A DNA stretch of 64,000 nucleotides from Schmidtea nova (lineage: Eukaryota), in assembly GCA_044892505.1 (NCBI GenBank), contig CM097883.1, positions 448,570,001 to 448,634,000 of the forward strand. The letters are read 5' to 3'. Shown here piece by piece: positions 1 through 63,663 of the stretch. The translations under genes and the position numbers were made by a program. The notes below the pieces were generated by a model. It ran no database searches, was not told where the DNA came from, and saw only the letters and a list, made by a program, of their open reading frames with translations. The stretch's first letter is position 1; every line of letters starts with the position of its first letter.

Positions 1-423
1 GTCGGTCGAGATAGGGTTGAAACGATAGAAAAAATGCATCTCAAAAGAGAGTCCACAATTTAAGTGCATGTCGGATTTACATACGAATGACTGCACTAGA
101 ATTGAATGTGGAAGATCATTGCTTGTGTAAAAATAATGAAAAGTATGATCAAAGAATAAATTTGATATAAGAATAACGAAAATAATTTATTAAAAATTAT
201 AGAAAAAATCTCCATTGAAATATCCGAAAAATAACAGAGATAGGAATAAAAATGGAATTAAATTAAACTTGATTGTTTTAATCAATCATTTAATGTACAC
301 AAAATAATGGACACACACATCATTTAACGGGATTAAAAACAAAGATTTTAGAAATTAATATAAATTGAATTATAAAATTAAATTTACAAAATATAAATAA
401 ATAATCATTTATTAAAACTAATA
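1..423 (+). repeat. Diverged repeat, inverted copy of 6181-6602
   Basis: The reverse complement of 6181-6602 aligns over the whole length, with shared blocks such as AGAATTGAATGTGGAAGATCATTGCTTGT, GAAAATAATTTATTAAAAATTATAGAAAAAATC and AAAAATAACAGAGATAGGAATAAAAA. Roughly 80% identity by eye. Confidence 0.85.
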
Positions 424-439
424 AATTAAGTTTAAATTT

Positions 440-700
440 GTTGTGGTGTATGGATGGGTTACATTAAAACATTCTAGGGACGCCTCTATCCATACCCATA
501 CATAAAATGCATACGTTACACACAAGCACCCTCGACTATTTCCCTGGATAATCGAGTTGGAAATGTGCAAGGTTTTTGAACAATGATGGGCAGATGAGCT
601 CTATTTCTAAAACTACTCCCCATTTATGTTCGGGGGTTCATCGTTGCCGATAGAAGGACTTACGCTTTCATTTCACTTTACTTCATTTGGAACCATTATT
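440..700 (+). mobile_element. Structured terminal motif of an unclassified element family, copy A
   Basis: Hairpin GTATGGAT(448-455)/ATCCATAC(488-495). Hairpin CTCGACTAT(531-539)/ATAATCGAG(548-556) with loop TTCCCTGG. Then TTGGAAATGT, CAGATGAGC, GGGGTTC and GATAGAAGG (649-657). Homologous to 5400-5740, 39500-39640, 48850-49070, 31230-31420 and 2784-2914. Confidence 0.65.
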
Positions 701-972
701 TTTCATTTTAACCCTACGGCCCCTTACAATATCAACTGGTAAAATATATCGTTACCTATATATTTTATTTTAAACTCCTAATGTTAATCATATGCAATTT
801 TTATTAATTATTTTATATCATGATATGGAAATAAATTATACTTTATAACTCAGTTTGCATTAAATAATTATTCTACTTTATTTTACAAAAAGAAAATTAA
901 TACGACAAAAAAAATTAAAAATATATTTTTACAAAATAATTAAAAAGAATTAGTTAAATTATATTCGACAAT

Positions 973-1464
973 TCACTCAAAAAATTTTAGAAAGTCATCA
1001 TCCAGCGCTATGAAATCCGTCGACGGATCTATTTCGGGTATCCCAGACATACCCTTAACTTGATTAATTAGTTGTTGCGAGTACTGTTTCTTCAATCGCC
1101 TTTGTCGGGAACCCATCTTGTTTTTCTTCTTCTTTTTATTTTCTATCGCCGACGAGATTTTTACGATCGGTTCTGATGTTGCCATGACCTCAGGGATTTG
1201 AGATAACCTTTCGGTATCATTTTCGATGGAACATCCTGATTTTTTCTCAGGCGACCAGTGTTCGTAGGTGACTGGTCGGATTAGACCTTTTAACTCTGTT
1301 TTGATGAATGATGTCGTAACCGAACGTAAGCATTTTCTTAGCTCTATTTTTGTCGCCTCCAGTTCAATGCGATATTTTTCGCCTGCTCTTTGGGCTCGTT
1401 GATTTTTCGTAATTTGTTCCTTCATTTGTTCTGGGCTAAACCAGCTTTTGCGGAGACGAGACAT
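973..1464 (-). CDS. Orphan 163-aa coiled-coil/basic protein carried by the unclassified element family
   Basis: Intact ORF. Aligns with the disrupted ORF at 38931-39352 (RKSWFSPEQMK vs RRTWFSPTEMK; ELEATKIELRKCLRSV vs ELSGVKLELN*CL*SV; IRPVTYEHWSP vs IRSSTFERWIP; KKNKMGSRQRR vs KRNRLGAKRRR). AATAAA follows the stop. Confidence 0.7.
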   Translation of the reverse strand: MSRLRKSWFSPEQMKEQITKNQRAQRAGEKYRIELEATKIELRKCLRSVTTSFIKTELKGLIRPVTYEHWSPEKKSGCSIENDTERLSQIPEVMATSEPIVKISSAIENKKKKKNKMGSRQRRLKKQYSQQLINQVKGMSGIPEIDPSTDFIALDDDFLKFFE

Positions 1465-2200
1465 TGTAGATTTTCTCTTTTGTTAGTCCAATTTCTTTCT
1501 CTAGACTGCGAATGATTCGCCAAGTCTTTTCCAATTCGGTTTGTGGGTTTTTTTGATTTGATGACATGGTTCTGAAATCTATTGTTATTATTCCTGGTTT
1601 ACTTTAAAGTTCGCATTTAATTATTGGTGAATGAATGTCTTTAGGAATCTTTATAAATTACTTTTATTTGATAATATATTTTATAACATTGACAGATCCC
1701 ATGCCATTGTTGGGATGATGATTTCCTTCTAGTTTTATCTAGCTATTATATTGAATTTTGGAGATGAAGAAGATGAATAGACATACAATAATTTTTAAAC
1801 ACTGTCGCTATGTACAGCAATCAGATTAATTCATTAAGTTTATTTATACCTGTGCTATCTGCAGCATTCAGGATGATTTAAGTTCAAAAGAAATGATTCG
1901 TGGATATTTGACTCGATCTTCAAAACCGGTCGCAATTTCGTTTTTAAATCAACAATTTTCGATTTTTGAAAAACTTTATTAGAATTATTTTAGAATGAAT
2001 TGAAAGACCTTGATTGATTTGTTTAACTGTTTCAATGTTTTAATGATTAATTGGCGGGTTTTGCTTTTAAATAAATGCTGAGTGTGAATTATAAGTTAAT
2101 TTAAAAAAGCAATTTTGAGATTGGGTTTTTGTCACAGTTATTGTTCGGTTTTATCTGTGCATTTGGGATGAAAATTATTTTGTAATTGATGAATTAAAAA

Positions 2201-2776
2201 ATGTCATTGGGCTCGAGTGTTTTTGATCGTTATGACTATTGTTCACCCGAAGGCAGATTATTTCAGGTCGAATATGCGATTGCGTTAGATGGATTACTTT
2301 CTGTTGGTATTCGAGGTAATGATTGTGACGTAGTTGCTACACAAAGAAAAGTCCCAGATAAAATGATTGAAGAGTTCAGCTACAAGATTATTTAATATAA
2401 CTGAAAGTACCGGTTGCGTTAGGACAGGTATCATTCCTGATTGCAGATCATAACTATGCCGTGCACAAATGAAAGCTACACGATTTAAATGCAAAAATGG
2501 ATACGATGCATTGCCGATATAAATCAATTGTACACTCAATCAGCTGAAATGAGGCCATTAGGCTGTTAAATGATCACATTATCATATGATAAGGAGATGA
2601 ATAAGCCACTGTTATTCAAAATCGATCCAAGTGGATTTGTAGCTGGTCATCGAGCTGTTGCGGTCGGTGGAAAGCAGTTGGAAGATAAAAGCTATTTGGA
2701 AAAGAAGCTTCGTAAAAATACAGAATTTTCAATTGATGAGGAAATCAATCGCTGCTGGACGCGGCGAACCAAGTAA
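2201..2776 (+). pseudogene. PSMA6: Proteasome subunit alpha type-6 processed pseudogene, 3'-truncated
   Basis: [37 protein letters not shown] and KIDPSGF..G.RA.AVG.KQ motifs. No introns. Frameshifts near 2390 and 2515, in-frame stops near 2452 and 2567, and internal deletions. Confidence 0.9.
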
Positions 2777-2783
2777 ATAAGAA

Positions 2784-2914
2784 CATTTTTTGAATGGATA
2801 TATTATGTTTTTGAGGATGAATAAAGGTAGATTGTTAATAGCAGGGGGTAAGAGATAGTTAAGAGGTAATCATGCGGTAGGACCGAAAAATAAGCAGAGG
2901 CGTAAGTCCTTCTA
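2784..2914 (-). mobile_element. Truncated copy F of the unclassified element terminus
   Basis: The reverse complement TAGAAGGACTTACGCCTCTGCTT...GCATGATTAC...ATCTACCTTTATTCATCCTCAAAAA aligns with 5622-5740 (TAGAAGGACTTACGCATCTACTT...GCATAATTAC...ATCTACCTTAATTCCTCCAAAAA). Confidence 0.7.
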
Positions 2915-2918
2915 ATAA

Positions 2919-4713
2919 TTACAATAGGATGTCCACAGTACATTTTATATAGATTTCATTCTTACGCATCAGATTTGGATTGTCCTCTAATTCTAATAGG
3001 CTTAAAAATTGTCGAAAGCCCTTTACACTATTTCTATTTGTCGGTCGAATAAGTGATTCAGTATTTGGATTATTTGCACATTTCACAATCTTACTGACAT
3101 GCGCCAGCCCAGTGCGCTGATTGATCAATGCAAATGTGACGGAATGCCTGAATGGCCATTCCAATATTCCATCCCACGGGCCCTTCATCAAACAAAATCC
3201 AATAGATAAATGCGTGCCCTCGTCATCACCACATCCATTAGGATGCATACCTAAACACATTTTATAACCATTTCTATGTGTGAAAAATGATTCGCTATAA
3301 ATAATTGTGTTGATCCATATTTCTGCATCTGCCATTTTATCACTGAATTTGTTGAGCTTCCAAATAAATTCTCCATAATTCAGTTGATTTTGATTGGCTG
3401 CCATTTCCAATAATTTGTTGTCAACATTTTGCATTGATTTATCGATTTTATTTGACATTTCCGTCTGATCAATTATATGTTTGTTTTTTATCTGATCGAT
3501 TTTTATAATTAATTCTTTCTGAAATTTTTATTTTATTTATTTATTAATCAGAAATTTATTTTACTTCTTTATTTTCTCTCAGATGATTCGCATTGTAAAA
3601 TTTGTTTTCTGTTTGCTGACAATTGGTAGTGCATTGGGCAATTTGCTGCTGGAAATTGTTCTCACGTGCTTGAATGGCCCGCTGAAATGTTGCCGCATCA
3701 AATAATCAATTATTTCATCAAAATTTCACCTGGTTGTCTTCGACATTCAATTTCAATCTATCCAATTCATCGCCCACATTTCTATTCACATTCCTCAATG
3801 CCGGCATGTCCTCGTTCAATAATGCGATTTCTCGAGCGTGATCGTCACATTTCCTCTGCAAATCTCCAATTTCAATCTTGATAATAATCACAATTGATCA
3901 ATAATTATGAATATTGCAATTTATTAACAAACTCGATTCCTTTGCTCATCTGAAATCAATTTATCCATATTTTCTCTTATCGCAACATTTTCAACATTCA
4001 AACAAATTATATCCGCATCCAACTGGCCAATTTTTACGGTTTTCTCATCAGATTGGCACTGCAATTCAGCAATTTCTTCCTGAACTCTCATTATTTATCC
4101 ACATCAAATCAAATATTGCATTTACTCGTCTTCTCTCTCCATCCAATTTCAATTCATTGATCTCAGTTTGCAATAAATTATTATTGGCTTTCATAATGCC
4201 CATCTCATTATTGAAATTGCCAATGAAGTCCATCAATAGTATTGTGTGCGTCAATATTTCAGATTGCAAATGATCCGCAACTTTATCCTGAGATATATTG
4301 CATGCGTTACATCCGATATTCGTATACGGACATGCAACTGATCGGTATTTGCACATCCGTGAATGATATTCTATTTTTCTGATTTCATCAACAAATACAC
4401 AATTCTTATTCAGGCATTTCACTTTTAATTTTAATATTTTGATATTAATTGCGTGATCCACTGCAATATTTTCATCCATATTCAGCATTTCCAGTTGACA
4501 TTCATCTGTGTTACCAGGACAAATTCTATTCTCACCGTCCAGAAAGCCTGAAATGCAAGTGAAACAAAACCTGCAACTGCATGGAGCACAGCGAGCATTG
4601 ATCAATAATTTTTTACACAGCAAACATAACATGTCGTGATCGATTTCTGTTACAAATTCATAATTAATATTTCTCATAATTTGCCAATCATTTTCTAATT
4701 TTAAACCAGCCAT
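2919..4713 (-). pseudogene. TRAF-family gene (RING, TRAF zinc finger, coiled coil, MATH), disrupted in the coiled-coil region
   Basis: ORF 4066-4713 has a RING (CLLC..CAPCSCRFCFTC..CP) and TRAF zinc fingers. ORF 2919-3458 is a MATH domain (FIWK, SESFFTHRNGYKMCL, HLSIGFCLMKGPWDGILEWPF). The 3565-4065 linker has several frameshifts and stops. One 46-nt GT-AG intron candidate at 3519-3564. Confidence 0.8.
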
Positions 4714-4871
4714 TTATCATAAATGTTTAATGTTTAAAAATAATTAAATGTTTTGATCCGTATTTTACCAACAAAACATGAATTTTATGTTATTGAGGTT
4801 CAGATTGATTAAATCAGATAATATAAACAAAGCCCAAACAAACATAATTGATAAAATTCATCTAAATTAAA

Positions 4872-5395
4872 CCCTTAACGCTATTTTTTTCACAAAACCG
4901 GCAAAAAAACATTTTTATTTATTGCAGAAAATTAAAGTTTAATTTAATATTTTAATTATTAATATTTTAATTTTAAGGATAAAAAATGCAAACTTTAATT
5001 AAAAAAAAATTATTTTTGTAATTTTCATGTTAACAGGAAAATAATATGATTGTATACTATGTACATTTTAAGTATTAAAAATCTATTTGTGTGTGATATA
5101 TCATAAAACATAGAGCTGCACATAGAACAACGTTCCATGGTTTACAATAATATTGTGACTCCCTCCTTATTTTCTTTTCCTTATTGTCACAGGTTTTACA
5201 GCAAACCGCACATAATCTAGTAGCATTATGTTTTTTTCTTTTGTGGGTATATATTCTGGGAAATGCCTCTAAATAAATCTTAACGAACTTGGTGTTTTTA
5301 GACGACCTTTTTTGGAAACTTGTGAGCCAGAATGATACTTTGTTATCATTAGAGATCTTCAGAAATTTATGTAACACAGCGTTTGAACTTAAATC
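4872..5395 (-). mobile_element. piggyBac transposon 3' remnant (C-terminal Cys-rich domain and terminus)
   Basis: ORF 5075-5377 ends TRLCAVCC..RRESQYYC..W.V.LC...CF.IYHT..DF, typical of the PGBD Cys-rich domain. TTAA(A)CCCTTAAC end at 4867-4879. Confidence 0.8.
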
Positions 5396-5399
5396 TATT

Positions 5400-5740
5400 A
5401 TTGGGTGGTAAGGGTGTCGTTATAAAAATTGTTAATGAATTCTAGAGATGAGGAAAACCCATACCACAACATAAATATCAATCTACCTCACTCGTGTGCC
5501 CATAGTTATTCCCTAAGTAACTATGTTGGTATTGTAAACGGTGGCGAGAATCTAATGAGCAGGTGAGCTCCGTTACCGAAACTACTCCCTATATTCTCTC
5601 TTTCGGGTCCTTTTCTGACGATAGAAGGACTTACGCATCTACTTGCTTTACAGTCCAATCGCATAATTACATTTAATTCTCTACTATCCTATGCTATCAC
5701 CTATCTACCTTAATTCCTCCAAAAATAATTCACCAAAATG
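5400..5740 (+). mobile_element. Structured terminal motif of the unclassified element family, copy B
   Basis: Hairpin GTGGTAAGGGT(5405-5415)/ACCCATACCAC(5457-5467). Perfect stem CATAGTTA(5501-5508)/TAACTATG(5518-5525) with loop TTCCCTAAG. Then TTGGTATTGT, CAGGTGAGC, GGGTCC and GATAGAAGG (5620-5628). Confidence 0.7.
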
Positions 5741-6180
5741 ATGAATGAATATGTATAATCACCTTTCTTTTATCCGAATTTGGCTCAAAGTCACCGATTC
5801 AGCGTAATCTCGAAAGAGTCACGTACGAAAGGCTTTTCACCAGGGGGTCAGCAACCACTGAGGAGTACATTATGTATTTTACCCCGGATATTATGAGGGT
5901 TTATTCATAAATAAATGTAAATAAACGTAACAAAATAAAATATTTATTACCCCAATTCACAATAATACACATTACAAATGAAAATATTTTTACCATCACA
6001 TAAAAAGAAACAAAAACATACTAACGCACTCAACAGACTGGCGAAATACAAAATTGTACTCACTGCAAATTAATGCAAAGTAAGTTTAGATTGTGATTTT
6101 TCAGCGTCTATTTATACTAAATCTACTAACGCTCACATATGTTGATATTTAAATAATGATATTTAACAATTTAAACATAC

Positions 6181-6602
6181 TTATTAGTTTTAATAAGTGA
6201 GTATTTATTTATTTTTTGTAAATTTAATTTTATAATTCGATTTATTTATTTTCTAAAATATTTGTTTTTAATTCCGTTAATTGATGTATATATCCATTGT
6301 TTTCGTACACTAATTGATTAATTAAAACAATCAAATTTAATTCTATTATATTTTTTATTCCTATCTCTGTTATTTTTACGATATTTGAATGGGGATTTTT
6401 TCTATAATTTTTAATAAATTATTTTCTTTATCCTAATACAAATTTTATTCTTTAATCATGCTTTTCGTATTCACTATACAAGCAATGATCTTCCACATTC
6501 AATTCTTGTACGCTCCTTCGTATGTTAATCCGACCTGCACTCAAATTGTGTGCTCTCATTTTAGATACCTCTTTTCTATTGTTTCACCCTATTTAAATCG
6601 AC
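6181..6602 (-). repeat. Diverged repeat, inverted copy of 1-423
   Basis: See 1-423. Confidence 0.85.
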
Positions 6603-9776: not shown

Positions 9777-10568
9777 TATAATAAAGAAATTGTCGGAACA
9801 TCAGATTGAATAAGAAATTTATAATTGATTAATGAAATTAAATGAAAATCTTTGGAATAACAATAATTTGAAATAAAGTTTGATACATTTTCAATTAATT
9901 TTCATATTAATTTTTGTATGACTATAGTTAAAAACAATTGTTTATCAGGTACATGATATTTCGGCACAGCTTTAATCATGTGTGTATTTCTACACTTGGT
10001 AAAGGTTGCGCTGAAATAAATAATTATAATTGTGTGCGAATCCAGACACGCACTGCAAAATTATGAGTTTTCGAACAACGTAATATGAGCAACACACCAG
10101 CTTTGTTGTGTATCTAAAATTTATTATTGGTTTTATTCATTAATATAAATTAATGTAATTACAGTTTGCATTCATTTTTTACCATGTACTGATTTTGTGT
10201 TTTATTATTTTTCTACCCTATTTGTCTACGACATAACAATTTTATCCATTACCTAGTTTATTATCATTAATCTACCTATTTTAGAAAGAGTTTTGGGCGA
10301 TGGTAGTATTTCGAAGCAGTAGCTCTTTAGCGAGGATTTATGAATTGTATTTTGGTCATCCTTGTAATTGGTAATGAATGTGCTGTTAATCGTTGTCGCC
10401 TTAAGTTAATAACTAAATCTTTTGGGGCAATATTATAAAGTATTTCATCCACTCTAGTAAACATATCAGCTAATAATGAATTTTGGTTATAAACAGCGCA
10501 AATTATAATCTGCTTAATTTCGTTCATTGGGGTTTGAACAGCTGTCTTTTTTATCAAACCCTTTCAAT

Positions 10569-20995: not shown

Positions 20996-21240
20996 GTATA
21001 TATATATATAAATATTAATATCACTAATTGCCATATTGGTAAGACTTTAAATCAAAATTTCTTTAAATAAGTACACAATATTTCGACACAGCCTTTATCA
21101 AGTAATACACACTTGATAAAGTCTGTGCCGAAATATTGTGTACTTGTTTAAAGAAATTTTGATCTCTAGTCTTACCATTATGAAAATTATTGGTATTAAT
21201 ATTAAAAAAAGATCAAAGGTGACACAAAAAGATAATTATG

Positions 21241-29378: not shown

Positions 29379-30479
29379 TTATTTCAGTTTTTTCATCGAA
29401 GACCCTAAATATCTTGACTTGTGGTCTGCGAAAAGAATCTTGAAACTACCTTCTAAGTCAATTTCTTCATCATTTGATTTTGCGTTAAACACAATTGAAC
29501 GACTCAGACAAAAAACAGCTCCGGCGTTATCGAATTCGCCACAATAATTCGGAGCGGAAAATATCGTTATAAAAGACCGATTGGCGAAAAATTCATAACC
29601 ATCTTCCACGACCTGGTGAGCTCTTATTATGAGATCTAAGCCAAACTTTTTCAAGAATTTATCAACAACAGTCGGATTGAAAACATAGGATATCCCTCTT
29701 TCATTGGGAGCGAATCCGTCTTGAGAGAAAAATTCATTGTGAAGCTCAGAACTGAACAAGCCATTTGGAAGATCTAATGGATCAGACCACAAAAGATCAC
29801 AAACTAATCCCTCTTCTGGAATGTCCGTTGGACGAACAATTGAGCGGATTTTATGCTTCAAAGTCTCTAAATTAACGACTTCCGATTTCAGCATTTCCGG
29901 CGACAGACCTCCATGACAACAGAAAATTTGGTTTTCTAAAATTGCTGCAATCGGCAGACAATTAAAAACGTCTAGAAATGATTTCCAAAGCTTTATACTG
30001 AATCGTCTTTTGCATTCATCATAAAATCCGTACACTCTACTCACGGCTTGACTCTCGTGATTTCCTCGAAGAAGATAAAACGAATTCGGATACTTGATCT
30101 TGTAGGCTAGTAGAATTGTAATTGTCTCAATTCCTTGGCGTCCTCGATCGACATAGTCTCCCAGGAACAGATACCGAGTATTACTTGGATCACCGCATAG
30201 CTGTAAAAGATGTATTAGGTCGGGAAATTGCCCGTGGATGTCGCCACAGATTTTCATTGGTCCTTCAGCTTCAATTAGCATCGGTTGGTTTTGAATAACG
30301 ACTTTCGACTGCTGTATGATGGACTGGACATCGGTTTCTTTTAAGGATACATTTAGAATTTTATTCTTTCCGGCATTTGTTAACATTTCAATGCATTCAT
30401 CCAGATCCAATAGGGGGCTGTCTGGTATTTGCTTACGGAGTGAAGGTGACGACTGTTTGGTTTCAGTTTTAACTGACAT
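29379..30479 (-). CDS. Divergent intronless PP1-family Ser/Thr phosphatase catalytic subunit (366 aa)
   Basis: Intact [38 protein letters not shown] and [13 protein letters not shown] motifs. Three loop insertions relative to canonical PP1. Confidence 0.93.
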
Positions 30480-30774
30480 TGGTAACTTTTAATTTCTTAT
30501 CGGTTTCATTGGAAAGTCAAGATTATCTTTTATTATTATCTTTTACAAATCAAATCAAAATAAAAATAAAAATCATGAAGATCGATTATTATTATTGGTT
30601 ATAATTATTAATTATAATTACTAATAATAATTACTAATAATAATTAATATTAATAATAATAATTACTAATCCTACTGGCACATCCCTTACTTACAAAGCT
30701 GCGAAGCACATTCACACAAAAAAATTCAAAGACAAATATTTTCTTCAAAGACTAGTTGAAAATTTTTTTAGAAG

Positions 30775-30895
30775 GGTACACTAATTTTCGACACAGCGTT
30801 TTTCAAAATTAGATCTAGTCTTTTTAAAAAAATGAAAATTTTTGAATTAGAAACGAAAAGACTAAAGGTGAAAAAGAGAGATAATAATGAAAAAC
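30775..30895 (+). repeat. Diverged arm of the foldback family
   Basis: TTTCGACACAGC, AGATCTAGTC, GAAAAGACTAAAGGTGAAAAAG. Confidence 0.6.
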
Positions 30896-31229
30896 AAATA
30901 TATCAACCCGACAAGAAATAGAAAAGAACTATTATCAACTCAAACCCATTTGAGAGCATGGCGCCAGAATTAGACGATGGTCAAGGTTCATTTCATTTAC
31001 TGTGTATAGATGTCACCATTTGTCTGAGTGTCGAGGTCATAGAAAAAAGTAATTTTGTTTAAGTTGAATGAAATGGGAACAATTTAATAAATTAAAACCT
31101 GAAAAGCTTACTAGAAACGGAATTAGAGTTAAGGAAACGTGTTGATATCGATTAAAGTGGACGAGATGTTGAAAAAACAAAAGTCGATAAATAATTAGAA
31201 GGGGGTAGATTAGATGACGAGAAAAATAT

Positions 31230-31420
31230 TGGTGGGTTATTGGTAAACGTAACACTAACTCATGGGACTCGATTCTCAATAACTCTATGTGTAAACCTTG
31301 CAAAACCATATTGTTAACCGTCGAATAGTTATGTTGGTGCAGTAGCAAATGGGTGGACATCCGCAAAAGGTGAGCAATGTTTCCAGGGCTATAGTTGATC
31401 GAATTTCTCAGTTGGGTATA
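31230..31420 (+). mobile_element. Diverged partial copy E of the unclassified element terminus
   Basis: Hairpin GGGTTATTG(31234-31242)/CAATAACTC(31277-31285), GTTGGT at 31333, GGTGAGC at 31369 and GGGT near 31414. GATAGAAGG is absent. Confidence 0.4.
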
Positions 31421-31627
31421 TTAACCGTTTCCGTCCTGCTAATAACTCAAAATCATGTGTATTCATTGGAGTAGTGAATGATACTCTTTAAGTAATTCAT
31501 TTTTCATGTTAATCTTTTTTTAAAAGACGTTTTACCAGCTCGAGGATTTTTTAACTTATTTGCGTACTTATCACGAAAAGATTTATTGGGAGAAATTTCG
31601 CTACGCTTTCCTTCTATGTTAATGATT

Positions 31628-32245
31628 TGTTGTTTATTATTTTTGAGTCGGTTTATTATCTGACTCCTCGTGTTCCCATAATTGAGTAATCATCAAATTT
31701 CAAAACAATAAATTTTATTGAATTCCAACAATTTACAAATGATGAATAAATAAGTAAATACAATTTTTATTTCTTACACAAACACTCAGAACTCTCTCCT
31801 GTTCAAGCAATAGGGGTAGGTCTACCAAGAGTAGATTGCCCTTTATGATACGATTCACGCTTCTTGATTTGCTAATGTCTGGTTCCGCACAATCTTTGTC
31901 TTACTTACCAAATGTGATTTTAACCTGTTCCCGATAAATATTTTGCTTTGACCAAAAATGGCAATTTGCTGTTGTTTTATGTTTCTTTTATAGTATTTCT
32001 ATTACGACAGCAATATAATTAAATTTCCCGAAATGGAAAACTAATAATATCATTTTTTTTCTATGAATTCTAATTTAATTTTTGCAGATTCGAAATAATT
32101 ATTACTCCTCCTAATTTAATTTACCTCAGTTTCCGATTCTGGAAATCTAATTTTATATCGTGTTTTCCTCTGGCTCGGGTTTCCTATTAGCCCGGGTTTT
32201 CCATGTACTCGGGTTTCCCATTGACTCGGGTTTCCCATTGTTAGG
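31628..32245 (-). mobile_element. LTR-like repeat family, copy 3 (candidate 3' LTR of the adjacent gypsy element)
   Basis: Minus strand: 4x17-nt repeat, ACTATAAAAGA, AGAAATAAAAATT, GGAGTCAGATA, ending AATAAACAACA. Confidence 0.6.
32174..32241. repeat. 4 x 17-nt tandem repeat CYCGGGTTTYCYATKRN
   Basis: Units at 32174, 32191, 32208 and 32225. Confidence 0.9.
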
Positions 32246-32346: not shown

Positions 32347-35300
32347 TTAGAAAATTGTACGGAATTGTCTCTCAATCTGTCCATTTGCTGAATGATGATA
32401 TGGACTTGAATAATTAATTTCAATATTGTGGAATTCTTCAAAATCTTTCATTAGCTTAGATTCAAATGATTTGCCTCTGTCACAGTTTATTATCCTTGGT
32501 GCACCAAACTTCATTATCCACTCTTCTTTCAGTAATCTTACCACTGTTTTTTCATCTTGCGATTTTACCGCATGTAAAGAAATAAACTTTCTATGATGAT
32601 CTATAATCCCAAGAATATATCTTTCTCCTCTCATTGCAAGTTGTAATGGACCACAAAAATCTACATAGATTGTTTCAAATAATTTCGAATCACTTTTGCA
32701 AATTATTTCTTCTTTTGTTTTAGTTGTATCAACCTTTCTTTTCTGACAGTTTTCACAGGCTTGTACAACATTACGAATAGATTGCTCCAAATCTTTCAAA
32801 TGAAAATTGTTTGATACGTACATTTTTACTTTTTTAGCACCCGCGTGACAGAGCTTTTTATGATATTCTATGATGAATTTTGACTTGTTTTCCTCTGGAA
32901 TCCAAATTTTATTATTATTGGTCATAATCACTCCGTTGACATATTTAAAAAATGTTTTATCTGGCATCATACTAATATTTTCTTTTATATTTTCAATTTC
33001 TCTTGAGTTCTTTTGCCATTTATTTTCAATATTTTCAGTCATCAGTGTCAACAATCTTGTTTTTAATTTACTCATTTTAGGATTTTCATGAATCATTTGA
33101 CATTGAACACATGTTTCACATTCTTTTCTAGATAGAGCGTCGGCATTATTGTGGTTATCACCTTTTCTGTATTGAATCTCCATGTCCAGACCACTAAGAT
33201 GGTTAATCCAAGTTTGAAATTGTGGAGTAATAGCTTTCTTTGTCTTCATCATAAAAGTAATGGCTTTGTGATCCGTTCTCAAAATAAACTTTTTACCATA
33301 TATATTGTGCTTTAAATGACCAGTAAAATAAAATATAGATAGTAATTCCTTTCTTGTTATACAATAGCCTAATTCGTGTTCATTCATAGCTCGGGATCCA
33401 TATGCGATTACTCTTTCTTTATTTTCATCTTTTTGAGATAGAACAGCACCGATGCGGTCAAAACTTGCATCTGTATCCAAAATGAATGGTTTAGAAAAAT
33501 CTGGAAACTTCAAAACAGGTGTAGACGTAAATTTCAGTTTAAAATTTTGAAATGAAGTTTCACACTCATCAGTCCACATAAGCTTCTTTTGTTTACTTCC
33601 ACATAACGCTTCTAATACTTTGGAATCTTTGGTGTAATTTTCTATAAATCTGCGATAGTAATTTGCCAGGCCTAAAATTCCTCTCAAGCTTTTTACGCAT
33701 TTAGGTCTTTCAAAATTTTTAATAGTTTCAATCTTGCTTTCATCCGTACGTATTCCATTTTCACTAATGATAATGCCCAAAAATTTTACTTCTTTCCTTT
33801 TGAATTGACATTTTGCTGGACTTATTTTAAGATTTGCTAATTTAATCTTTTGAAAAACCTTTTCAATGGTGCTATAATGTTCATTCAATGTCTTTGAAAA
33901 TATAAGGATATCATCCAGATATACAATTGTTCCATTCCAATTTAATTCTCCAAGAACCAAATTCATAAGTCTTTGAAATGTTGCTGGTGCGGCGGCTATT
34001 CCAAATGGCATTCTGTTAAAGTAATATTGCTTGCTTTTTGTCGAGAATGCTGTTTTTAATTTTGAAGCCTTGTCGAGTTCTACTTGATAATAAGCATTCC
34101 CTAAATCAATTGTCGAGAAAAATTTTGCTCCGTCAAGAATATCTAATAATTCATCTGTATTTGAAATGGGAAAAATCGGTCTTTCTATTACATTATTTAA
34201 AGCACGATAATCCAAACATATTCTTATATCACTGCTGTTTTTCTTTTAACACATACTAATGGAGAATTCCAGGGAGATGTACATTCTGATATAATGCCAT
34301 ATTTCAACATTTCTTGAATATTTTCTTCAATTTTCTCTATTAAATGAATCGGTTGTCGCCTTGGGTTTATTACAATCGGGCTACCTTTAATAAGTATTTC
34401 ATGCTTTAATAGTTCGGTTTTCCCAACATCCCATTTATGTTTCATAAAAATGCCGTCAAATGTGGAAATTAGATTATTTATTATCTTATCTTCACTCATG
34501 TGTTTATTAAATGAATTTTCCATAATTGCATTTATTTCGTCTTCACATTTATTAATTTGTAATTGCATTCCAAATCTTTCGAGAAAATCTATGCCTCCTA
34601 TTAACTTTGGGTTTATATCTTTGGCTACAACGAATTCTACTTTTTTAATTTCAGACATTTTATCAATTTTTACATTTAATAAAGTTTTACCGCAAATTTC
34701 AATCGGGCTTTCATTCGCACATCTTAATTTTAAATTACTTGTAGTCATACTCAAGTTTCCAAGTTTTTTAAAAATATTATAATCAATCACACTTATTTTA
34801 GCTCCAGTATCTAATAGACATACTAATTTTACATTATTAATCATCACGGTAACACTGGGCCTTCCTTGCATTTTATCGTATACTATTATATCATTCCGTT
34901 TATCACGATTAAAAACATTTATTTCATTAGAAGTTAGAGTGGGGTCTTTAAAAAGTTCATCCATACAAAATTTATCAATGTATATATTAGTATAATTTCT
35001 ATAATCAAAAACACAAGCACAACAGTTATCATTCAAACTATCACAATCATTCAAAGTCATACAATCCTTACTCACATCATTAATTACCTTTAATTTATTG
35101 CTCCGATCACCTCCTTGTGTGGTGGAGCATTCCCGTTTGGGTACTCAAAACCAGCCTCTGGATCCTCATCACCGAATGCGGCCACTGATTTATGGAATTT
35201 TCGTCGTCTGTCTGGAAATAACTCATGGCACTGATGTTTGAAATGTCCTGATCTTTTACAATGGGCACATTGAATATTGGGGCATTCAGATCTTTTATGG

Positions 35301-36153: not shown

Positions 36154-36516
36154 AAGACAAATTATAATATAACGTTTATTAATTTTAAATCCAATATTAT
36201 TAAAACAAATGATAACGTTAATTTGTTTGAGGAGTTTCTAAAAATATAATTAATGTATAAGTAAGGATTTCAACATACAATCAAACATGCACAGCATCAT
36301 ACCATTATATTTTAATACAAATTNNNNNNNNNNNNNNNNNNNNNNNNNNNNNNNNNNNNNNNNNNNNNNNNNNNNNNNNNNNNNNNNNNNNNNNNNNNNN
36401 NNNNNNNNNNNNNNNNNNNNNNNNNNNNNNNNNNNNNNNNNNNNNNNNNNNNNNNNNNNNNNNNNNNNNNNNNNNNNNNNNNNNNNNNNNNNNNNNNNNN
36501 NNNNNNNNNNNNNNNN

Positions 36517-38554: not shown

Positions 38555-38730
38555 AACCTTGCAGACCTAAATTTGTCAATCCCATCAACTACAGTGCCGG
38601 TTAAACGAAGTATTTATCATTGAAACGAATTAAAAGTAATTCTCGTTGTACAATGTCACAAGAACGTTTTCATGGGTTAGCCTTGATGTCTATTGAAAAA
38701 GGACTACTATTTGATTTTAATGAATTATGT
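38555..38730 (+). mobile_element. hAT transposase C-terminal dimerisation-domain remnant
   Basis: LSIPSTTVPVKRS/LKRIKSNSRCTMSQERFHGLALMSIEK, with a frameshift. Confidence 0.8.
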
Positions 38731-38930
38731 TATTTCAAATTTTGTGAAAAAATCCAGAAGAGTGGACTTCATCTTTAAAGAAGGATGGTAAACTTTGGAG
38801 TAATTAACTTAGAGGCGTTCAGTCTTAATCTTTCGGATGGTAGCTTCGTGCCAATGACCTTTCGATCAAGCACATTTACCAGTGATCCGAATTTGCGGTT
38901 CCTCTCGTACTGAGCGGAATTACCATTGTA

Positions 38931-39352
38931 ATGACTACTTATATAGTAGAGGTAGACGAGTAACGGCGGACGTGGTTCAGTCCTACCGAAATGAAGGATG
39001 TATTGAAGGGTAAGGACAGAATGCAACGGTCTCTCGATGAGCATGCCAAGGAACTATCAGGGGTCAAGTTAGAGCTGAACTGATGCTTGTAATCCGTAGC
39101 AAACTACTTTATCGAGAGAACCAGATCCGCTCAAGTACTTTTGAGCGCTGGATCCCACGAACGAGTCTAGACATGAACACGCAGACTACGGAGACTCTAC
39201 CTACCAGGGGAAGTATGAACGCCGACGTAGGTATTACATCCGATCCTCAATCAGTGCCTATAAAGCCGAAAAAGAGGAATCGATTGGGCGCGAAAAGACG
39301 CCGTGAGCTTAGAGCATTTGCAAAACGCATGGGGATTGAATTCAACCTTTAA
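38931..39352 (+). pseudogene. Disrupted homolog of the 973-1464 orphan ORF
   Basis: WFSP at 38973-38984, in-frame stops at 38961, 39080 and 39089, and a frameshift near 39110 into the frame ending at 39352. See the alignment under 973-1464. Confidence 0.75.
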
Positions 39353-39499
39353 AGCGGCTTAACAGAAAAACAACTGATCAATGTTATTAATACTGATGTG
39401 TTTTTAAGCTAAATAAACGTATTGTATTGTAGTTACGTTAATTTTTATTTTTTATGCATGAATGAACCTTGGAAATATGAATGAAGGATGATTGATAAA

Positions 39500-39640
39500 T
39501 AAAACGGACCTTATGAAACCCACAAAGGACCTTCTATCAGTCGTGGTGAACCCGTAGCATTAATAGGGGGAAATAACCGCCTATGTTGCTCACCTGCCCT
39601 ATTTATCTACACTGCTAAGCACATTACCAACAATCCGAAC
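39500..39640 (-). mobile_element. Structured terminal motif of the unclassified element family, copy C
   Basis: Reverse complement reads GTTGGTAATG(39622-39631), GGTGAGC(39588-39594), stem AGCA..ATAGG/CCTAT..TGCT, GGGTTC and GATAGAAGG(39530-39538). Confidence 0.7.
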
Positions 39641-39709
39641 ACCCAGCAAAATCCCATGTTTAACATCGACAAACAAAACCAACACTCATATAAAATCAGT
39701 GATATTTCA

Positions 39710-40224
39710 ATGTGAATTATCATTTGACCAAAAAGAAAAAGAAGAGAGAAATGTGAAACAGTGTCGAGGAAACCAATTCAAACTTTAAACCAGTAAAAAT
39801 AATAATCTCCCTTTCGGTTACCTACCTTCTTGTGTTATATATTTTAGAAAGGTGCAGATCAAATCTGAAAGTGTTATTGACCAGATAATTGTTGTTTTGA
39901 AAATCAATAAATCTTCTGTGTTGGGTATTGGATTTATTCAATTTGCACAAAGAGCACGAAGAGTCAGAGTTAATTCTGACAAAAGTTATGATAACCCAAC
40001 AAAAATTAAAATTCTTTCTCCTTTTAACAATAGGTTTCTCTCTCTTTAACTTAAATGTGTATCGTTTGTTATATGATTTTAGTGTAATTGATATATTTAA
40101 AAGTTTATTTTTGTTCAGGAAGAACCAACATCCGATACAGTCCGAGCCGTTAGCGAAACTCGACAAAAAATTTGAATCAACCTGGTTTTGTCTAAAAGCA
40201 ATGCAAAAGAATATCAAGAAATAA
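39710..40224 (+). CDS. Candidate 3' exons of an unidentified spliced gene
   Basis: Phase-consistent chain ...QTLN(ca|GT..AG|a)KVQIKSESVIDQIIVVLKINKSSVLGIGFIQFAQ...PFNN(ag|GT..AG|g)KNQHPIQSEPLAKLDKKFESTWFCLKAMQKNIKK*. No start found. Confidence 0.35.
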
Positions 40225-46719: not shown

Positions 46720-46962
46720 TGCCTTTACATTAGATAGTATTAATCTTCATTTATTAGTGTTTTTTGATAATTTATTTATAAATATTTTTTAAATGAATTT
46801 TGATGCAAAACAAAAGTATAAGTGACCAAATGACGAAGTATAAAGTATATACATTTACTTTTTATTAAAATTCATCTAAAAATTAATTATCATAATTACC
46901 AAAGAACACCAATAAATTAAATATTAAAATATCCAATGCAAAAATCATACTATCAAACCCTA
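46720..46962. mobile_element. Degenerate copy of the 61222-61515 MITE
   Basis: Shares TTCATTTATTAGTGTTTTTTG, GTGACCAAA.GACGAA, ATTAAAATTCATCT and the right TIR ATGCAAA..TCATACTATCAAA, followed by (TA)n. Confidence 0.8.
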
Positions 46963-48151: not shown

Positions 48152-48849
48152 CTAGAAAAAAATTATTTTTAAGTTAATTAGTTGAAGTAAGTGAAAAAAA
48201 GATTTACTTGTGATGGTTTTAGTTGAAGAAAATTGACGTAAAATTGGGTTAAATTAAAGCAAAGAGAAGCATAAGAAAAGAATTAGAATTTTGATCATTT
48301 TTGAAAAGATTTTCTGTTTTTATAATATATAAACAAATGTAACGTAATATTAATTTAATCCAGTATTTGTAATTAAAACTTTTAAAAAAAAGAAATATTA
48401 AATTTTAATAAGGTCTTTTATTTTGTTCATCTTTAATATTTTCTTTTCAATTTAAAAGAAATTTTTAACTTTTATTTATTTTAAGACTAGATAGAATTTT
48501 TTTTATCGGTACATGAATTTTGATCGATATCCTGCGTTACTACTGTGCAAATTAAGGTCTTAGGGTTCCTGTCGCTATATTAAGTTGCTACTGTTGCGTA
48601 AGGTGTTGATACCCGCAAAAAGCGATAGTTTGTTGGTTCCAGAACTATAATTGATCTGGCATCAAGTGGGTACAAGGGCTTCGTTAGAAAATCTGTGTCC
48701 GTTGAATTTCAAATTCTTGCCTTTTGTTTTTGAAATACATATTGAAATATATATATATTGTTTTTTGAAATATATATTGGGTTTACATATAATTTTATTA
48801 CTGGCATATTCATTTCTTTGACTTCTATTTGAATATTAATACCATATTG

Positions 48850-49070
48850 ATGGTGGGTTGTTGACCGTCAATATGACCTTGACGTTGCTATGGCTCATAT
48901 CAACCACTCAACATACAAAACATTAGATTGACCATCTTGTTGCCCGTCACAATGTAACGTGGTAATGCAACAAATAGGTGGGTATTCGCAATCAGTGAGC
49001 GCCGAAAAATTCGAGACTGTGATTGAACGAATATATCCTGGGTCCAACGGCTACCGATAGAAGGTTTAAT
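48850..49070 (+). mobile_element. Structured terminal motif of the unclassified element family, copy D
   Basis: GTGGGTTG(48853)/CAACCAC(48901) hairpin, GTTGC/GTAAC stem, TGGTAATG(48960), GTGAGC(48995), GGGTCC(49040), GATAGAAGG(49056-49064). The minus strand near 49420-49500 reads ELEN*IKVRKCL, similar to ELEATKIELRKCL. Confidence 0.65.
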
Positions 49071-52000
49071 GCCCGTTTTTGTCCCTTTTAAGATTTCAAT
49101 CTACATTTCAAAATAAGTAATCTACATCAATATAAATTTATTATTACATAAAAAAACCATTTTCCAACATCAAAACATCAACAATTCACGCAAGGATCCA
49201 TTTAAATTACACATAACCTAATAATAAACAGAATAAAATCAATAAAATCATTCGTTCAAAAAGTACTAAAGTCCTTCGGGTTTTTCAAGGCGCTTTTCTT
49301 ACTCTACTGTCACCAAATCCTTGACTTTTCCAATCAAAATATAAAGCGTAATCAAATCAATTATTTCAATCAATCGCTATACAATATATTATCCAAAGAT
49401 GCAAACATTTTCGCACCTTTATTTAATTCTCAAGCTCATTCTCAAACATATTATCACAACTTAATTCAGGATCAAATATTCCTTCAAAATTACCCATGAT
49501 TGGGGTATACGATTTCTGTTATTTTGGCCTAAAACTGCGATTATTTTCGTAGGTCTTCAAACTTTTGTGTTGTTAATATTTAAAATTTAAGTAATCTTTA
49601 TTTATATCCTAACCCTATTGTCTATCTTGCTTATTTAAAAATCTTTATCATTTTATTAAAATTTAATATTTTAACTTTCAAAAATTTGCCGAGGCCCTAG
49701 CAACAGGTAACGATACAATTTCTTTTCCCAAATTTCAATTAAATACACTATAAATTTATTTGAATTTTTATGCCTTTCATTTAAATTTCTGAATTTTAGA
49801 TCAAATTTTAGATTAGGGAAATCAAATCTCAAGGGTTCCGGTGTCACTCTTATCGTTAAAAAAGCTGGCAAAAGAAAACTATATGGACGACTTTCAAAAA
49901 ATTCTAGTATCCTATTGGCTCAATTTTATTATAGTAAGTATTATAATATAAAGAAATTTATTGATTTTGTTTTATTTTTAGCAACAGAGGTTTCCGTTTC
50001 AAACTGAAAATAGAGGTAAAATTTCATTTTCCTTTTGTAAATTTAAATTACATGATTATTCCTTATAGCCTCAAGAATTATCGGAGAAATCTATGGAACT
50101 GGCCTCTCAAGTCAGATGTTCAACAGAATAGAAATCATCAATATTGTCAATCAGTTCACAAAATCCAATCTCTCTCAGCATTTTTTATTGCGTTTCCATC
50201 TCAAAAAAGAACAAATGGCTGCAGTAAATTCTGACAAATCCTTTATGCCAACGACAATTGAAAGAATGTCGTTATCATCAGAAAAACCAAATCTATCCTT
50301 CCGTGCAAGACTCTTATATGGATTTTGAAATATATGGCCTAAACTATGGATATTAATCTTATTGTATTTTGTTTTTGGAAATTTTATACAAAAAATATTT
50401 TTCCATATGAATTTTTCTTACTTAAATGATAATAGGGATTTTTGTAAAAATATTTGAACGAAGACCAAACACAGCAGTTTTGTCGTCCGTTTCCCTCATG
50501 TAATGATAAACCCCATCGAAATCCTACTTTCCATGTTCAGCATAGTTGGGATAGACGCTATAAATTACAGGTTTTCTTTGTGACGATTATTCTTACACTT
50601 TTGCAAATTATCCAGAGAATAGTTATTAGTCGATATAAATAAATCAAAATCGACAATCAGTACATTTCGGAATTAAGAGTATTTACGAAAGGAACTTTTC
50701 ATGGACAGTGTTCACCATAAGGTTAGTTATGAGTATGAGATGTTAACAAATGGGTTTTACTGGAGTTTTTTAAGCAGTAATAATTCTTTCTATAGGCTGG
50801 TTAGGCTGATGTTTAGAATGTTATTGGTAAATGATTGGCTTGCTTGGGTTTTTAATTAAATAATTTTTTTGAATACATTTCCTAGATGCACCGTGCTGCA
50901 TGGATGATGTGAGTAAATGGAGGGATGGAGTATGAAGATTGTGTTGTTAAGTGAGACAAACGAAGTTATGTGAAATTATTGTGGAATGAATTTGTTGTGT
51001 ATGGCGTTTTCTATGGATTTTGATTGTTGGATGAGCTGATTCTGCATGTATTTATGGGTGTATTATGCTGTTGGTGAGTGTAGTAATGAGTGAGATGGAG
51101 TGATTGCAAGTTTGTGTGTATGTATACCGTTATAGATTTGTTATGGAGTTTCTATTGTTGGGATTTTATGTGATTGTATGTTGGATGTAATATGATTGGG
51201 TGAGTGTGTGTGTGAATTCTCTGGATGTATGATGCCGATGGATGCTATTGAATGAAATGATGTAGTATGTGTGTTGGTAAATGAATAGATTGTCTGGTGT
51301 AGTGTTAAGTATTTATAGTGCTAATGAATTATATGGATGCAATAAATTGTAAAGAGGGTTTTATTGATAGTTTTGCGTTTTTATGTGTGGAATTTATGAA
51401 AAGGGGGGTTGTATATAAAATAATTTTCCTAATTTTCGGAAATAATAAATTAAATTTTATCATTTACCAAATTTTATAAGTAACTAAATTTGGAATTTTA
51501 TGAAGTTATATATTTATAAATTGATTTTTACGTTTTTTTTTAAATATTAATTTGACTTAATATTTATAAATTTTCCTAAAATAATTAAATTCAGAATTTT
51601 ATGAATTCATACAATTATAAAATTTTTCGATTTATTATTTTCCTAGGTAAATTAGGGACATTTAAATTTTTATATAATTCACAAATTAATTAAAAATGCA
51701 TATATAATAATTAATATACATTATAAATTAAATTTTTCTAAATAAATTTTAAAAACATTAAATAAAAAAAAATATACACAATTATACAAAATTTATATTA
51801 AAATTACTGATTTGTAATTTCTTCACAGGGATTCGAATTTACTTGATTGAACTTTTTACGAGGTTTATAAAATCATAGAAGTATCAGATTTAGGATTTTC
51901 CTTCAATTATCATTCAAAATCAACTCTTTGAATCATAGTGTTTTCGATAACAGATGTGGTGAATTTTAGTTTCGTTCAAACGTGATTTTTTCGAGAAAGG

Positions 52001-59049: not shown

Positions 59050-63663
<4,614 letters not shown>

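What the first reader, a model, noticed from the sequence alone, without database searches (positions are those of the whole stretch)
440..1900. Unclassified element family: orphan ORF plus a structured terminus, with no RT or transposase
Six diverged loci (440-700 +, 2784-2914 -, 5400-5740 +, 31230-31420 +, 39500-39640 -, 48850-49070 +) share ordered blocks GTTGGTA.TG / GGTGAGC / GGGTYC / GATAGAAGG; two of these copies are partial. In at least two loci an orphan ORF points toward the block and stops 150-320 nt from it, with AATAAA in between. A TATAAATA box lies on the ORF strand at 1841-1848. No transposase, RT or recombinase is associated. I cannot assign this to LTR, DIRS, Penelope, Helitron or viral families. 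It looks like a self-contained 1-2.5 kb mobile or virus-derived cassette (inference).
Basis: partly seen in the sequence, partly recalled or inferred. Interest (0 to 1): 0.82.

Follow-up and report, generated by a model that had tools for sequence, protein, structure and literature searches.

The report
Old structured repeat family, unclassified
The six loci are real copies of one old, decayed interspersed repeat of about 320 bases with conserved hairpins, in what looks like a flatworm genome; two copies sit beside a small orphan gene, nothing links the family to a virus, and it is an ordinary unclassified repeat.

Summary
Six loci, plus a seventh weak fragment, share ordered blocks at nearly constant spacing, far above chance. 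They form two subfamilies of a discrete module of about 300-330 nt with sharp ends.

The module carries hairpins kept by compensatory changes. One end has an A-rich run. One copy lacks the opposite end.

A 163-aa ORF (973-1464, minus strand) has a broken homolog at 38964-39367. In both loci it lies in the same order and orientation relative to the module. Codon-position identity of 0.57/0.65/0.35 shows past protein-level selection. The ORF has no relative in any library searched.

The TATA box and AATAAA signals occur at background frequency. No RT or transposase is linked to the family, and two scans of viral contigs gave nothing above chance.

My best reading is a dead, non-autonomous, RNA-mediated (SINE-like) module, with the ORF link secondary (confidence 0.4). 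The main rival is a longer ORF-plus-module element (0.25). Solo LTR and a locally duplicated non-coding RNA gene are weaker rivals. A viral origin is unsupported.

One 64-kb window cannot settle the class. Interest is low to moderate.

The parts
438..762 (+). Module copy c440 (subfamily A, full length). It holds hairpin H1 at 437-505, hairpin H2 at 531-538/549-556, block GTTGGAAATG, helix H3 at 594-601/634-641 and GATAGAAGG at 649-657.
   Evidence: HMM hits. Folding gives H1 a z-score of -2.3.
973..1464 (-). Orphan ORF of 163 aa, intact. The predicted model has a long N-terminal helix, a low-confidence middle and basic C-terminal helices. It points toward c440.
   Evidence: ORF list. Homolog in the window. 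Codon-position identity 0.57/0.65/0.35. No relatives found. AF2 gives pLDDT 71 and pTM 0.27.
1436..1567 (-). ORF of 43 aa that overlaps the start of the 163-aa ORF in another reading frame. It may be a former N-terminal part of that ORF.
2808..2915 (-). Partial module copy c2784. Only the part from (T)AGAAGG to the A-rich end is present. It begins 3 nt after the stop codon of the TRAF gene on the same strand.
   Evidence: 77% identity to c5400 over 107 nt. HMM E=1.7e-9. Sequence read.
5398..5740 (+). Module copy c5400 (subfamily A, full length). Its flanks on both sides are unrelated to those of the other copies.
   Evidence: H1 z-score -2.8.
31227..31512 (+). Module copy c31230 (subfamily B). 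An internal deletion has removed GGGTYC and GATAGAAGG.
   Evidence: Homology to c48850, E=1.4e-6. Also.
38964..39367 (+). Broken homolog of the 163-aa ORF, with at least two in-frame stops and at least one frameshift. It points toward c39500.
   Evidence: tblastn and tblastx collinear segments, summed E about 8e-12.
39441..39745 (-). Module copy c39500 (diverged member of subfamily A).
   Evidence: HMM E=2.9e-5 from a model built without this copy. Covariance model hit with H3 paired.
48567..48694 (+). Weak, degenerate partial copy of subfamily B, about 150 nt upstream of c48850 in the same orientation.
   Evidence: nhmmer E=0.01-0.03 against c31230 and E=0.63 against the five-copy HMM.
48848..49159 (+). 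Module copy c48850 (subfamily B, full length).
38792..38929 (-). Neighbour, not shown to be part of the family. It is a fragment of large-subunit rRNA (Rfam model positions 3013-3155) lying 35 nt from the start of the broken ORF copy. It is on the module-sense strand.
   Evidence: Rfam RF02543, 93.5 bits, E=1.5e-22.

Best explanation
The blocks belong to a discrete module of about 300-330 nt. It is an old, now dead, non-autonomous interspersed repeat.

I think it most likely spread as RNA. The strand that was copied would read GTTGGTA .. GGTGAGC .. GGGTYC .. GATAGAAGG. That RNA would have a structured 5' body (hairpins H1, H2 and H3) and an A-rich 3' end. Spread would depend on the reverse transcriptase of some other element, as it does for a SINE. 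This last step is inferred.

On this reading the 163-aa ORF is not part of the mobile unit. It would be a lineage-specific gene that has a module copy in its 3' flank. Locus 2 would be a decayed copy of 'module plus flank', made by segmental duplication or by read-through of the module's weak end.

Shown here: the family itself, its sharp ends, the hairpins kept by compensatory changes, and the homology and past coding constraint of the ORF. Inferred: the RNA intermediate, which strand is functional, and the passenger status of the ORF.
For: - Sharp boundaries. Similarity between c5400 and c2784, and between c48850 and c31230, stops at the same two ends, and the flanks are unrelated.
- A-rich end. 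An A-rich run sits at the same aligned end in c39500, c48850, c2784 and c5400.
- Truncation. The one truncated copy, c2784, lacks the opposite end (5' in this sense). LINE-mediated copies are typically truncated that way.
- H2. Four of its 7 pairs changed on both sides between c440 and c5400, and 100% of cells are paired. With the partner strand slid by 1-3 columns, 30-43% of all 15 pairs (H2 and H3 together) are paired.
- H3. It pairs the two conserved blocks GTGAGC and GGGTYC. One position runs G-C, G.U, A-U across the copies.
- H1. One A-U to G-C exchange is visible between c31230 and c48850 (read by hand from the sequences).
- Strand. G.U pairs favour this strand: 15 against 4 in H1, and 32 against 20 over all helices. 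H1 also folds about 5 kcal/mol better on this strand in c440 and c5400.
- Spacing. Block spacing stays constant although the sequence between the blocks has diverged.
- Age. Copies are 37-59% identical, so the family is old.
- State of the ORFs. The ORF copy at locus 2 is broken while the one at locus 1 is intact. The end region of c39500 does not fold better than shuffled sequence, z=+0.35, as expected for a neutrally decaying passenger copy.
Against: - No SINE head. ARAGORN finds no tRNA and Rfam finds no tRNA, 5S, 7SL or snRNA similarity. No A box or B box is evident.
- No target-site duplications can be recognised in the sequences read.
- No partner LINE is present in the window.
- ORF and module are collinear in two loci whose modules differ greatly. 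That is explained more simply if the ORF travels with the module.
- The closest relatives lie close together: c440, c2784 and c5400 within 5.3 kb, and 48567 beside c48850. This fits local duplication as well as it fits transposition.
- The strand evidence is weak. The overall G.U against A.C count is 32 to 20, and H3 windows fold slightly better on the other strand.
- The covariance model with H2 and H3 did not detect the distant copies better than the sequence profile did.
Confidence: 0.4

Rival explanations
1. A longer non-autonomous retroelement of about 1-1.5 kb. It would consist of the small ORF, a spacer, and the module acting as a structured 3' untranslated end, with hairpin H1 as the 3'-terminal stem-loop recognised by a partner reverse transcriptase. 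This would resemble stringent-type LINE tails, or the ORF1-only 'half-L1' elements. The short copies would be tail-only derivatives. This is the reading closest to the first reader's.
For: - ORF, spacer and module are collinear in the same order and orientation in two loci whose modules have diverged strongly.
- Both the ORF and the module show signs of selection, while the spacer cannot be aligned.
- Every full copy keeps the H1 end, which is the 3' end in the ORF sense.
- At locus 2 a purine-rich, A-rich run follows that end.
- ORF and module share a G+C content of about 40%, against 29% for the window.
Against: - The short copies end at one and the same point in both subfamilies, not at graded 5' truncation points.
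- The copy c2784 lacks the supposed 3' end.
- In the ORF sense the shared boundary is a T run, not a feature expected there.
- G.U pairs lean toward the opposite strand.
- The ORF has no coiled-coil plus RRM or CCHC signature, and no relative anywhere.
- Only two ORF copies exist in the window and one is broken.
Confidence: 0.25
2. Solo LTRs. The module would be the complete short LTR (about 320 bp, TG...CA) of an LTR retrotransposon. Loci 1 and 2 would keep a last internal ORF plus the 3' LTR. The copy c31230 might be the 3' LTR of the Gypsy-type element at 32347-36153(-).
For: - The unit is discrete, with sharp ends and TG...CA-like termini in all full copies.
- Most copies are solitary, as solo LTRs are.
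- The copy c31230 lies 830 nt beyond the stop codon of the Gypsy pol gene, in the matching orientation.
Against: - No pair of modules in direct orientation flanks an internal region. The pair c440/c5400 is about 59-74% identical, depending on the alignment, and encloses host genes.
- No second module copy is visible on the gag side of the Gypsy element. Two N runs lie there and were left unfilled, so this point is not conclusive.
- No polypurine tract or primer-binding site lies next to any copy, and no target duplications are seen (read by hand).
- The A/T run at one boundary is shared by the copies, which unrelated flanks of solo LTRs would not show.
- The region between pol and c31230 has no similarity to the ORF or to the flank of c48850.
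Confidence: 0.1
3. Not mobile. The module would be a small family of structured non-coding RNA genes, possibly spliced, read on the block strand and multiplied by local duplication. In two places it lies tail to tail with the ORF gene. In four of five copies the best-conserved blocks look like splice junctions (..AG|GTGAGC and ..GATAG|AAGG, about 60-66 nt apart).
For: - Spacing is constant and hairpins are conserved.
- The closest relatives are physical neighbours.
- GT...AG lies at the block edges in c5400, c39500, c48850 and c31230.
- G.U pairs lean toward this strand.
Against: - Seven copies in 64 kb, on both strands and in unrelated contexts: the 3' UTR of the TRAF gene, beside a transposase-like remnant, and beside a Gypsy element.
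- One copy is truncated, one has an internal deletion and one is degenerate. That is the profile of decaying repeats, not of maintained genes.
- In c440 the donor-like site reads AT.
- No Rfam family matches.
- The splice-site resemblance is a lead recalled from memory. No tool tested it.
Confidence: 0.12
4. An endogenous viral element, that is, a virus-derived cassette.
For: Only the negative fact that the ORF is an orphan and that no transposition enzyme is linked to the family.
Against: - No viral protein family matches the ORF (PHROGs, Pfam, PDB sequences).
- No relative exists among 1.84 billion representative proteins.
- The gapped motif is absent from 2.9 million viral contigs.
- The 17 hits of the 17-mer are of the order I estimate by hand from the size of the collection.
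- The copies behave as a multi-copy interspersed repeat.
Confidence: 0.02

Closest known systems
SINEs, in particular families that keep a conserved central domain across diverged subfamilies (CORE-, V-, Deu- and Meta-type SINEs; named from my own knowledge)
   Same: Length of about 300 nt, discrete ends, an A-rich end and a copy truncated at the opposite end. No coding capacity in most copies. Short blocks conserved between otherwise diverged subfamilies. High density, at 7 copies in 64 kb.
   Different: No tRNA, 5S or 7SL-derived head or Pol III boxes were detected. No target duplications are visible. No partner LINE is known. Two copies are linked to an ORF.
Stringent-type LINE 3' tails and ORF1-only derivatives such as HAL1 (named from my own knowledge)
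   Same: A small helical, basic ORF is followed by a conserved structured non-coding end with a terminal stem-loop. There is no RT of its own.
   Different: The short copies share one fixed inner boundary rather than graded truncation. The ORF shows no ORF1-like domains. The strand evidence leans the other way.
Solo LTRs and TRIM-like short LTR elements
   Same: A discrete unit of about 320 bp with TG...CA ends, mostly solitary.
   Different: No paired copies, no primer-binding site or polypurine tract, and no target duplications were found. One end has a shared A/T run.
Penelope-like elements and hammerhead-bearing retrozymes or Sm-alpha-type flatworm SINEs
   Same: The host appears to be a flatworm. 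There is a partial tandem arrangement at 48567/48848. A structured non-coding module is present, and an intron-like GT..AG stretch lies inside the repeat.
   Different: No hammerhead or other known ribozyme model matches, even at E up to 10 on two copies. No RT or GIY-YIG ORF is present.

Membership tests
SINE | Head derived from a tRNA, 5S, 7SL or snRNA gene, with an internal Pol III promoter | tested here: not met
   ARAGORN finds 0 genes. Rfam gathering and E-value scans find no such match in or near any copy.
SINE | Short (under 600 nt), non-coding, discrete unit with an A-rich or simple-repeat 3' end | tested here: met
   The module is 300-330 nt with sharp ends. An A-rich run lies at the same end in four copies (sequences).
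SINE | Target-site duplications, and a 3' tail shared with a partner LINE | tested here: inconclusive
   No duplications are recognisable in copies this diverged, and no LINE is present in the window. A whole genome is needed.
LTR retrotransposon (LTR or U5) | Two copies in direct orientation flanking gag/pol, with a primer-binding site and a polypurine tract | tested here: not met
   No such pair exists. The gag side of the Gypsy element shows no module copy in the readable sequence, though two N runs were left unfilled. No PBS or PPT lies next to any copy.
LTR retrotransposon (LTR or U5) | The module is the end of a longer LTR shared between copies | tested here: not met
   Flanks of c31230 and c48850, and of c5400 and c2784, are unrelated beyond the module.
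Non-LTR retrotransposon (LINE) or HAL1-like element | RT/EN ORF or ORF1-type protein; copies share the 3' end and are truncated from the 5' end to varying degrees | tested here: not met
   No RT is linked to the family. The ORF has no Pfam match. The short copies share one inner boundary. The copy c2784 lacks the presumed 3' end.
Penelope-like element or retrozyme | Hammerhead ribozyme in the repeat; RT plus GIY-YIG ORF in autonomous copies | tested here: not met
   No hammerhead or other ribozyme family matches at E up to 1 over the window, or at E up to 10 on loci 5380-5760 and 38600-39800.
DNA transposon or MITE | Terminal inverted repeats and a transposase | tested here: not met
   The c440 end has no inverted partner. 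Inverted identity between the two ends within a copy is only 6-9 nt. The only transposase-like trace is a weak zinc-finger remnant at 5075-5377(-) (zf-Tnp_2, E=0.13) that abuts c5400 and is not part of it.
Endogenous viral element | Significant similarity of a gene or the sequence to a virus | tested here: not met

The most novel reading that the evidence does not exclude
The ORF and the structured module form one small retroelement-like unit of a kind not yet described. It would encode a helical, basic orphan protein and carry its own conserved RNA end. It would have no polymerase or integrase, and would persist by borrowing another element's enzymes. The module alone would be its miniature derivative.
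Probability: 0.1. Interest if true: 0.55.

Novelty: new member of a known kind. Interest (0 to 1): 0.3.

Why it matters
Flatworm genomes, especially planarian ones, are largely made of repeats that have no class. A family with conserved hairpins, constant block spacing and a possible protein partner is a tractable example for annotating that unclassified fraction. It could also help to find which reverse transcriptase serves which passenger.

For the scan itself the main value is negative. The finding is a real repeat family, but there is no evidence for a virus or for a new class of element. Two of the arguments behind the original interpretation, the TATA box and AATAAA, are background noise in 70% A+T DNA.

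Tried and rejected
- **Known RNA families.** Rfam gathering and E-value scans of the whole window and of two loci, plus ARAGORN, found nothing in the module. The window-wide hits are microRNA-like matches to unrelated palindromic repeats.
- **Consensus structure.** RNAalifold on MAFFT alignments of all five copies predicts no structure, because the alignments shift the stems.
- **Covariance model.** A model built from c440 and c5400 with H2 and H3 gave c39500 17.5 bits and c48850 7.1 bits. That is no better than the sequence profile.
- **Protein coding across the blocks.** The ORF-sense frame reads AHL(P/L)...(T)(F/I/L)PT in several copies, but the 12 residues between are not conserved and subfamily B shifts the frame. 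I rejected this reading (sequences).
- **Metagenome scan with the gapped motif.** It returned at least 120 contigs. A large group are GC-rich soil metatranscriptome contigs of about 2.35 kb that share nothing with the module beyond the searched motif. I treated them as chance matches.
- **Viral contigs.** The 17-mer gave 17 hits, of the order I estimate by hand from the size of the collection. The gapped motif gave none.
- **ORF relatives.** Nothing was found by the word-index search, the exhaustive HMMER search, Pfam, PHROGs, NCBIfam, PDB sequences, or comparison with the window's own Gypsy gag.
- **Structure prediction.** The model has pTM 0.27, so I did not run a fold search because it would be meaningless.
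- **Exact-protein look-ups.** Neither the ORF nor the PP1 gene is on record. Contigs of the two nearest PP1 relatives gave no species name.
- **Literature search.** A search for planarian SINEs produced no sequence-level lead.
- **Terminal inverted repeat search.** Negative.
Full report
**Setting.** The window has 29% G+C and is eukaryotic. It holds:
- a TRAF gene (RING, zf-TRAF, MATH) at 2919-4713(-);
- a decayed intronless proteasome alpha copy at 2201-2776(+);
- a PP1-type phosphatase at 29379-30479(-);
- a Gypsy-type gag/pol at 32347-36153(-);
- an eIF3c gene at 40848-45049(+);
- an ING-like PHD gene at 47381-48151(-).

The best named relatives of the PP1 paralog are flatworm proteins at 60-65% identity. 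Two unnamed transcript-derived proteins reach 81-83%. The source is therefore probably a free-living flatworm. This is an inference. Two runs of N (36324-36516 and 36676-36886) were left as they are.

**The observation.** GATAGAAGG occurs four times against 0.27 expected. The ordered gapped motif occurs twice against none in shuffles.

Pairwise and profile searches tie the loci together:
- c440 and c5400 are homologous over about 270 nt (E about 1e-13).
- c2784 matches the last 107 nt of c5400 at 77% identity.
- c39500 is found by a profile built without it (E=2.9e-5).
- c31230 and c48850 are homologous to each other (E=1.4e-6).
- c48850 is reached from subfamily A at E=0.012.
- A seventh degenerate fragment lies at 48567-48694.

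The blocks keep nearly constant spacing in all copies (35-36, 40-45 and 15-16 nt), although the sequence between them has diverged. Pairwise identity over the core is 37-59%. The family is real and old. Two subfamilies, A and B, are present.

**Anatomy of the module.** I use 'block sense' for the strand that reads GTTGGTA .. GATAGAAGG, and 'ORF sense' for the strand on which the 163-aa ORF is read. On that ORF strand the module lies in reverse complement.

In block sense the unit starts with T(G)TGGTG-like bases and ends about 300-330 nt later at an A-rich run. Beyond both points the flanks of even the closest pairs are unrelated. It is therefore a discrete unit, not the tip of something longer, in at least four copies. 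The copy c2784 lacks the first two thirds. The copy c31230 has an internal deletion.

Three helices recur.
- **H1** is a hairpin of about 60 nt at the very start. Its z-score is -2.3 in c440 and -2.8 in c5400. Between c31230 and c48850 one pair is exchanged from A-U to G-C; I read this by hand from the sequences.
- **H2** lies just before GTTGG. Independent folds of c440 and c5400 agree on 7 pairs. Four of those pairs changed on both sides, with 100% pairing. Counted over all 15 pairs of H2 and H3, 93% of cells are paired, against 30-43% when the partner strand is slid by 1-3 columns. With only two sequences the shuffle control cannot go below about 0.06.
- **H3** pairs the conserved blocks GTGAGC and GGGTYC with each other. 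One position reads G-C in c39500, G.U in c5400 and A-U in c440.

The 'structured terminus' is therefore real. A consensus fold of all five copies could not be obtained from MAFFT alignments. A covariance model carrying H2 and H3 did not improve detection of the distant copies. The structure evidence is thus good within subfamilies and thin between them.

G.U pairs outnumber A.C mismatches on the block-sense strand: 15 to 4 in H1 and 32 to 20 overall. H1 folds about 5 kcal/mol better on that strand in c440 and c5400. This leans toward block sense as the functional strand, but H3 windows lean slightly the other way.

**The ORF.** ORF 973-1464(-) encodes 163 aa and has a homolog at 38964-39367(+). 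The N-terminal part, the C-terminal basic part and the module follow one another in the same order in both loci. In both loci the ORF points at the module, and the module lies in reverse complement to the ORF.

The locus-2 copy is broken by at least two in-frame stops and at least one frameshift. Identity by codon position in the best segment is 0.57/0.65/0.35, the signature of past selection on the protein.

At locus 1 a 43-aa ORF overlaps the start of the 163-aa ORF in another frame.

The protein has no match in Pfam, PHROGs, NCBIfam, PDB sequences, the word-indexed 5.8-billion-protein set or the exhaustive 1.84-billion-representative search. It also does not resemble the Gypsy gag in the window. 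The AlphaFold model is a long N-terminal helix, a low-confidence middle and basic C-terminal helices, with pTM 0.27. That is too weak for a fold search.

The spacer between ORF and module cannot be aligned between the two loci. The TATAAATA at 1841-1848 is one of 33 in the window. AATAAA occurs 3.2 times per kb per strand. Neither counts as evidence.

**What it most likely is.** Four features fit a short retroposed RNA read in block sense: the discrete unit, the A-rich run at one end, the copy truncated from the other end, and the lean of G.U pairs. In other words, it works like a SINE.

It fails the membership test for SINEs on the defining head. There is no tRNA, 5S, 7SL or snRNA similarity. 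Target duplications and a partner LINE cannot be assessed in one window.

On this reading the ORF is a neighbour. Locus 2 is a decayed duplicate of 'module plus flank'. Its broken ORF fits that, and so does its end region, which folds no better than shuffles (z=+0.35).

**The main rival.** The ORF may belong to the element, with ORF, spacer and a structured 3' end served by a foreign reverse transcriptase. That explains the collinearity in two strongly diverged loci and the shared G+C content of 40%. It does not explain the fixed inner boundary of the short copies, the truncation of c2784 or the strand lean.

**Weaker rivals.**
- *A short complete LTR.* The termini read TG...CA, most copies are solitary, and c31230 lies 830 nt beyond the Gypsy pol stop. 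However, there is no paired copy, no PBS or PPT and no shared longer LTR.
- *A locally duplicated, possibly spliced non-coding RNA gene.* This is suggested by GT..AG at the block edges about 60-66 nt apart, and by the fact that the closest relatives are neighbours. The truncated, deleted and degenerate copies in unrelated contexts speak against it.
- *A viral origin.* It has no support.

**Limits.** No eukaryotic genome, Dfam or Repbase was available, so class assignment rests on seven copies. The rRNA fragment next to locus 2 is unexplained. It lies on the block-sense strand, downstream of the module and the antisense ORF. It could be an unrelated insertion or a chimeric copy.

**Verdict.** This is an ordinary but unclassified old repeat family with a well-conserved structured module. 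Interest is 0.3.

Noticed in passing
window 1-438 and 6168-6589: An inverted repeat of about 440 nt (85-88% identical) brackets 439-6167. That stretch holds c440, the ORF, the proteasome pseudogene, the TRAF gene and c5400. The left arm may run off the window. Related AT-rich pieces occur at 46740-46916 and 61219-61518.
   Followed up: partly
window 38792-38929 (-): An isolated fragment of large-subunit rRNA covering the sarcin-ricin loop region (Rfam LSU_rRNA_eukarya positions 3013-3155, 93.5 bits). It lies 35 nt from the broken ORF copy. The whole-window scan missed it, and only the scan of the short stretch found it.
   Followed up: partly
window 2201-2776 (+): An intronless, decayed proteasome alpha-subunit copy with several stops and frameshifts, probably a processed pseudogene. 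It ends where the partial module c2784 begins, and it faces the 3' end of the TRAF gene.
   Followed up: partly
window 5075-5377 (-): A 100-aa ORF with a Cys-rich C-terminus that weakly resembles the zinc finger of piggyBac-type transposases (Pfam zf-Tnp_2, E=0.13). It is cut off about 20 nt from the start of c5400.
   Followed up: partly
window 21011-21203, 36557-36675, 38111-38163, 9932-9979, 30759-30806: A family of near-perfect palindromes (MITE-like foldbacks) next to (TA)n tracts. They score as microRNA precursors in the Rfam E-value scan (mir-31 and MIR9555, below gathering score). These are almost certainly repeats, not microRNA genes.
   Followed up: no
window 32347-36153 (-): A Gypsy-type element with protease, RT, RNase H and integrase in long ORFs. 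The gag-side flank is interrupted by a palindromic repeat and two N runs. A tandem repeat of about 17 nt lies at about 32160-32240, just beyond the pol stop.
   Followed up: partly
loci L018-L097 (for example L032:1100-1260): Many soil metatranscriptomes hold nearly identical GC-rich contigs of about 2.35 kb with no long ORF and no Rfam family. They happened to match the gapped motif. They are unrelated to the window, and I did not identify them.
   Followed up: partly
window 56361-56615: A tandem duplication of 126 nt (98% identical) inside an exon encoding an immunoglobulin domain (ORF 56413-56922).
   Followed up: no
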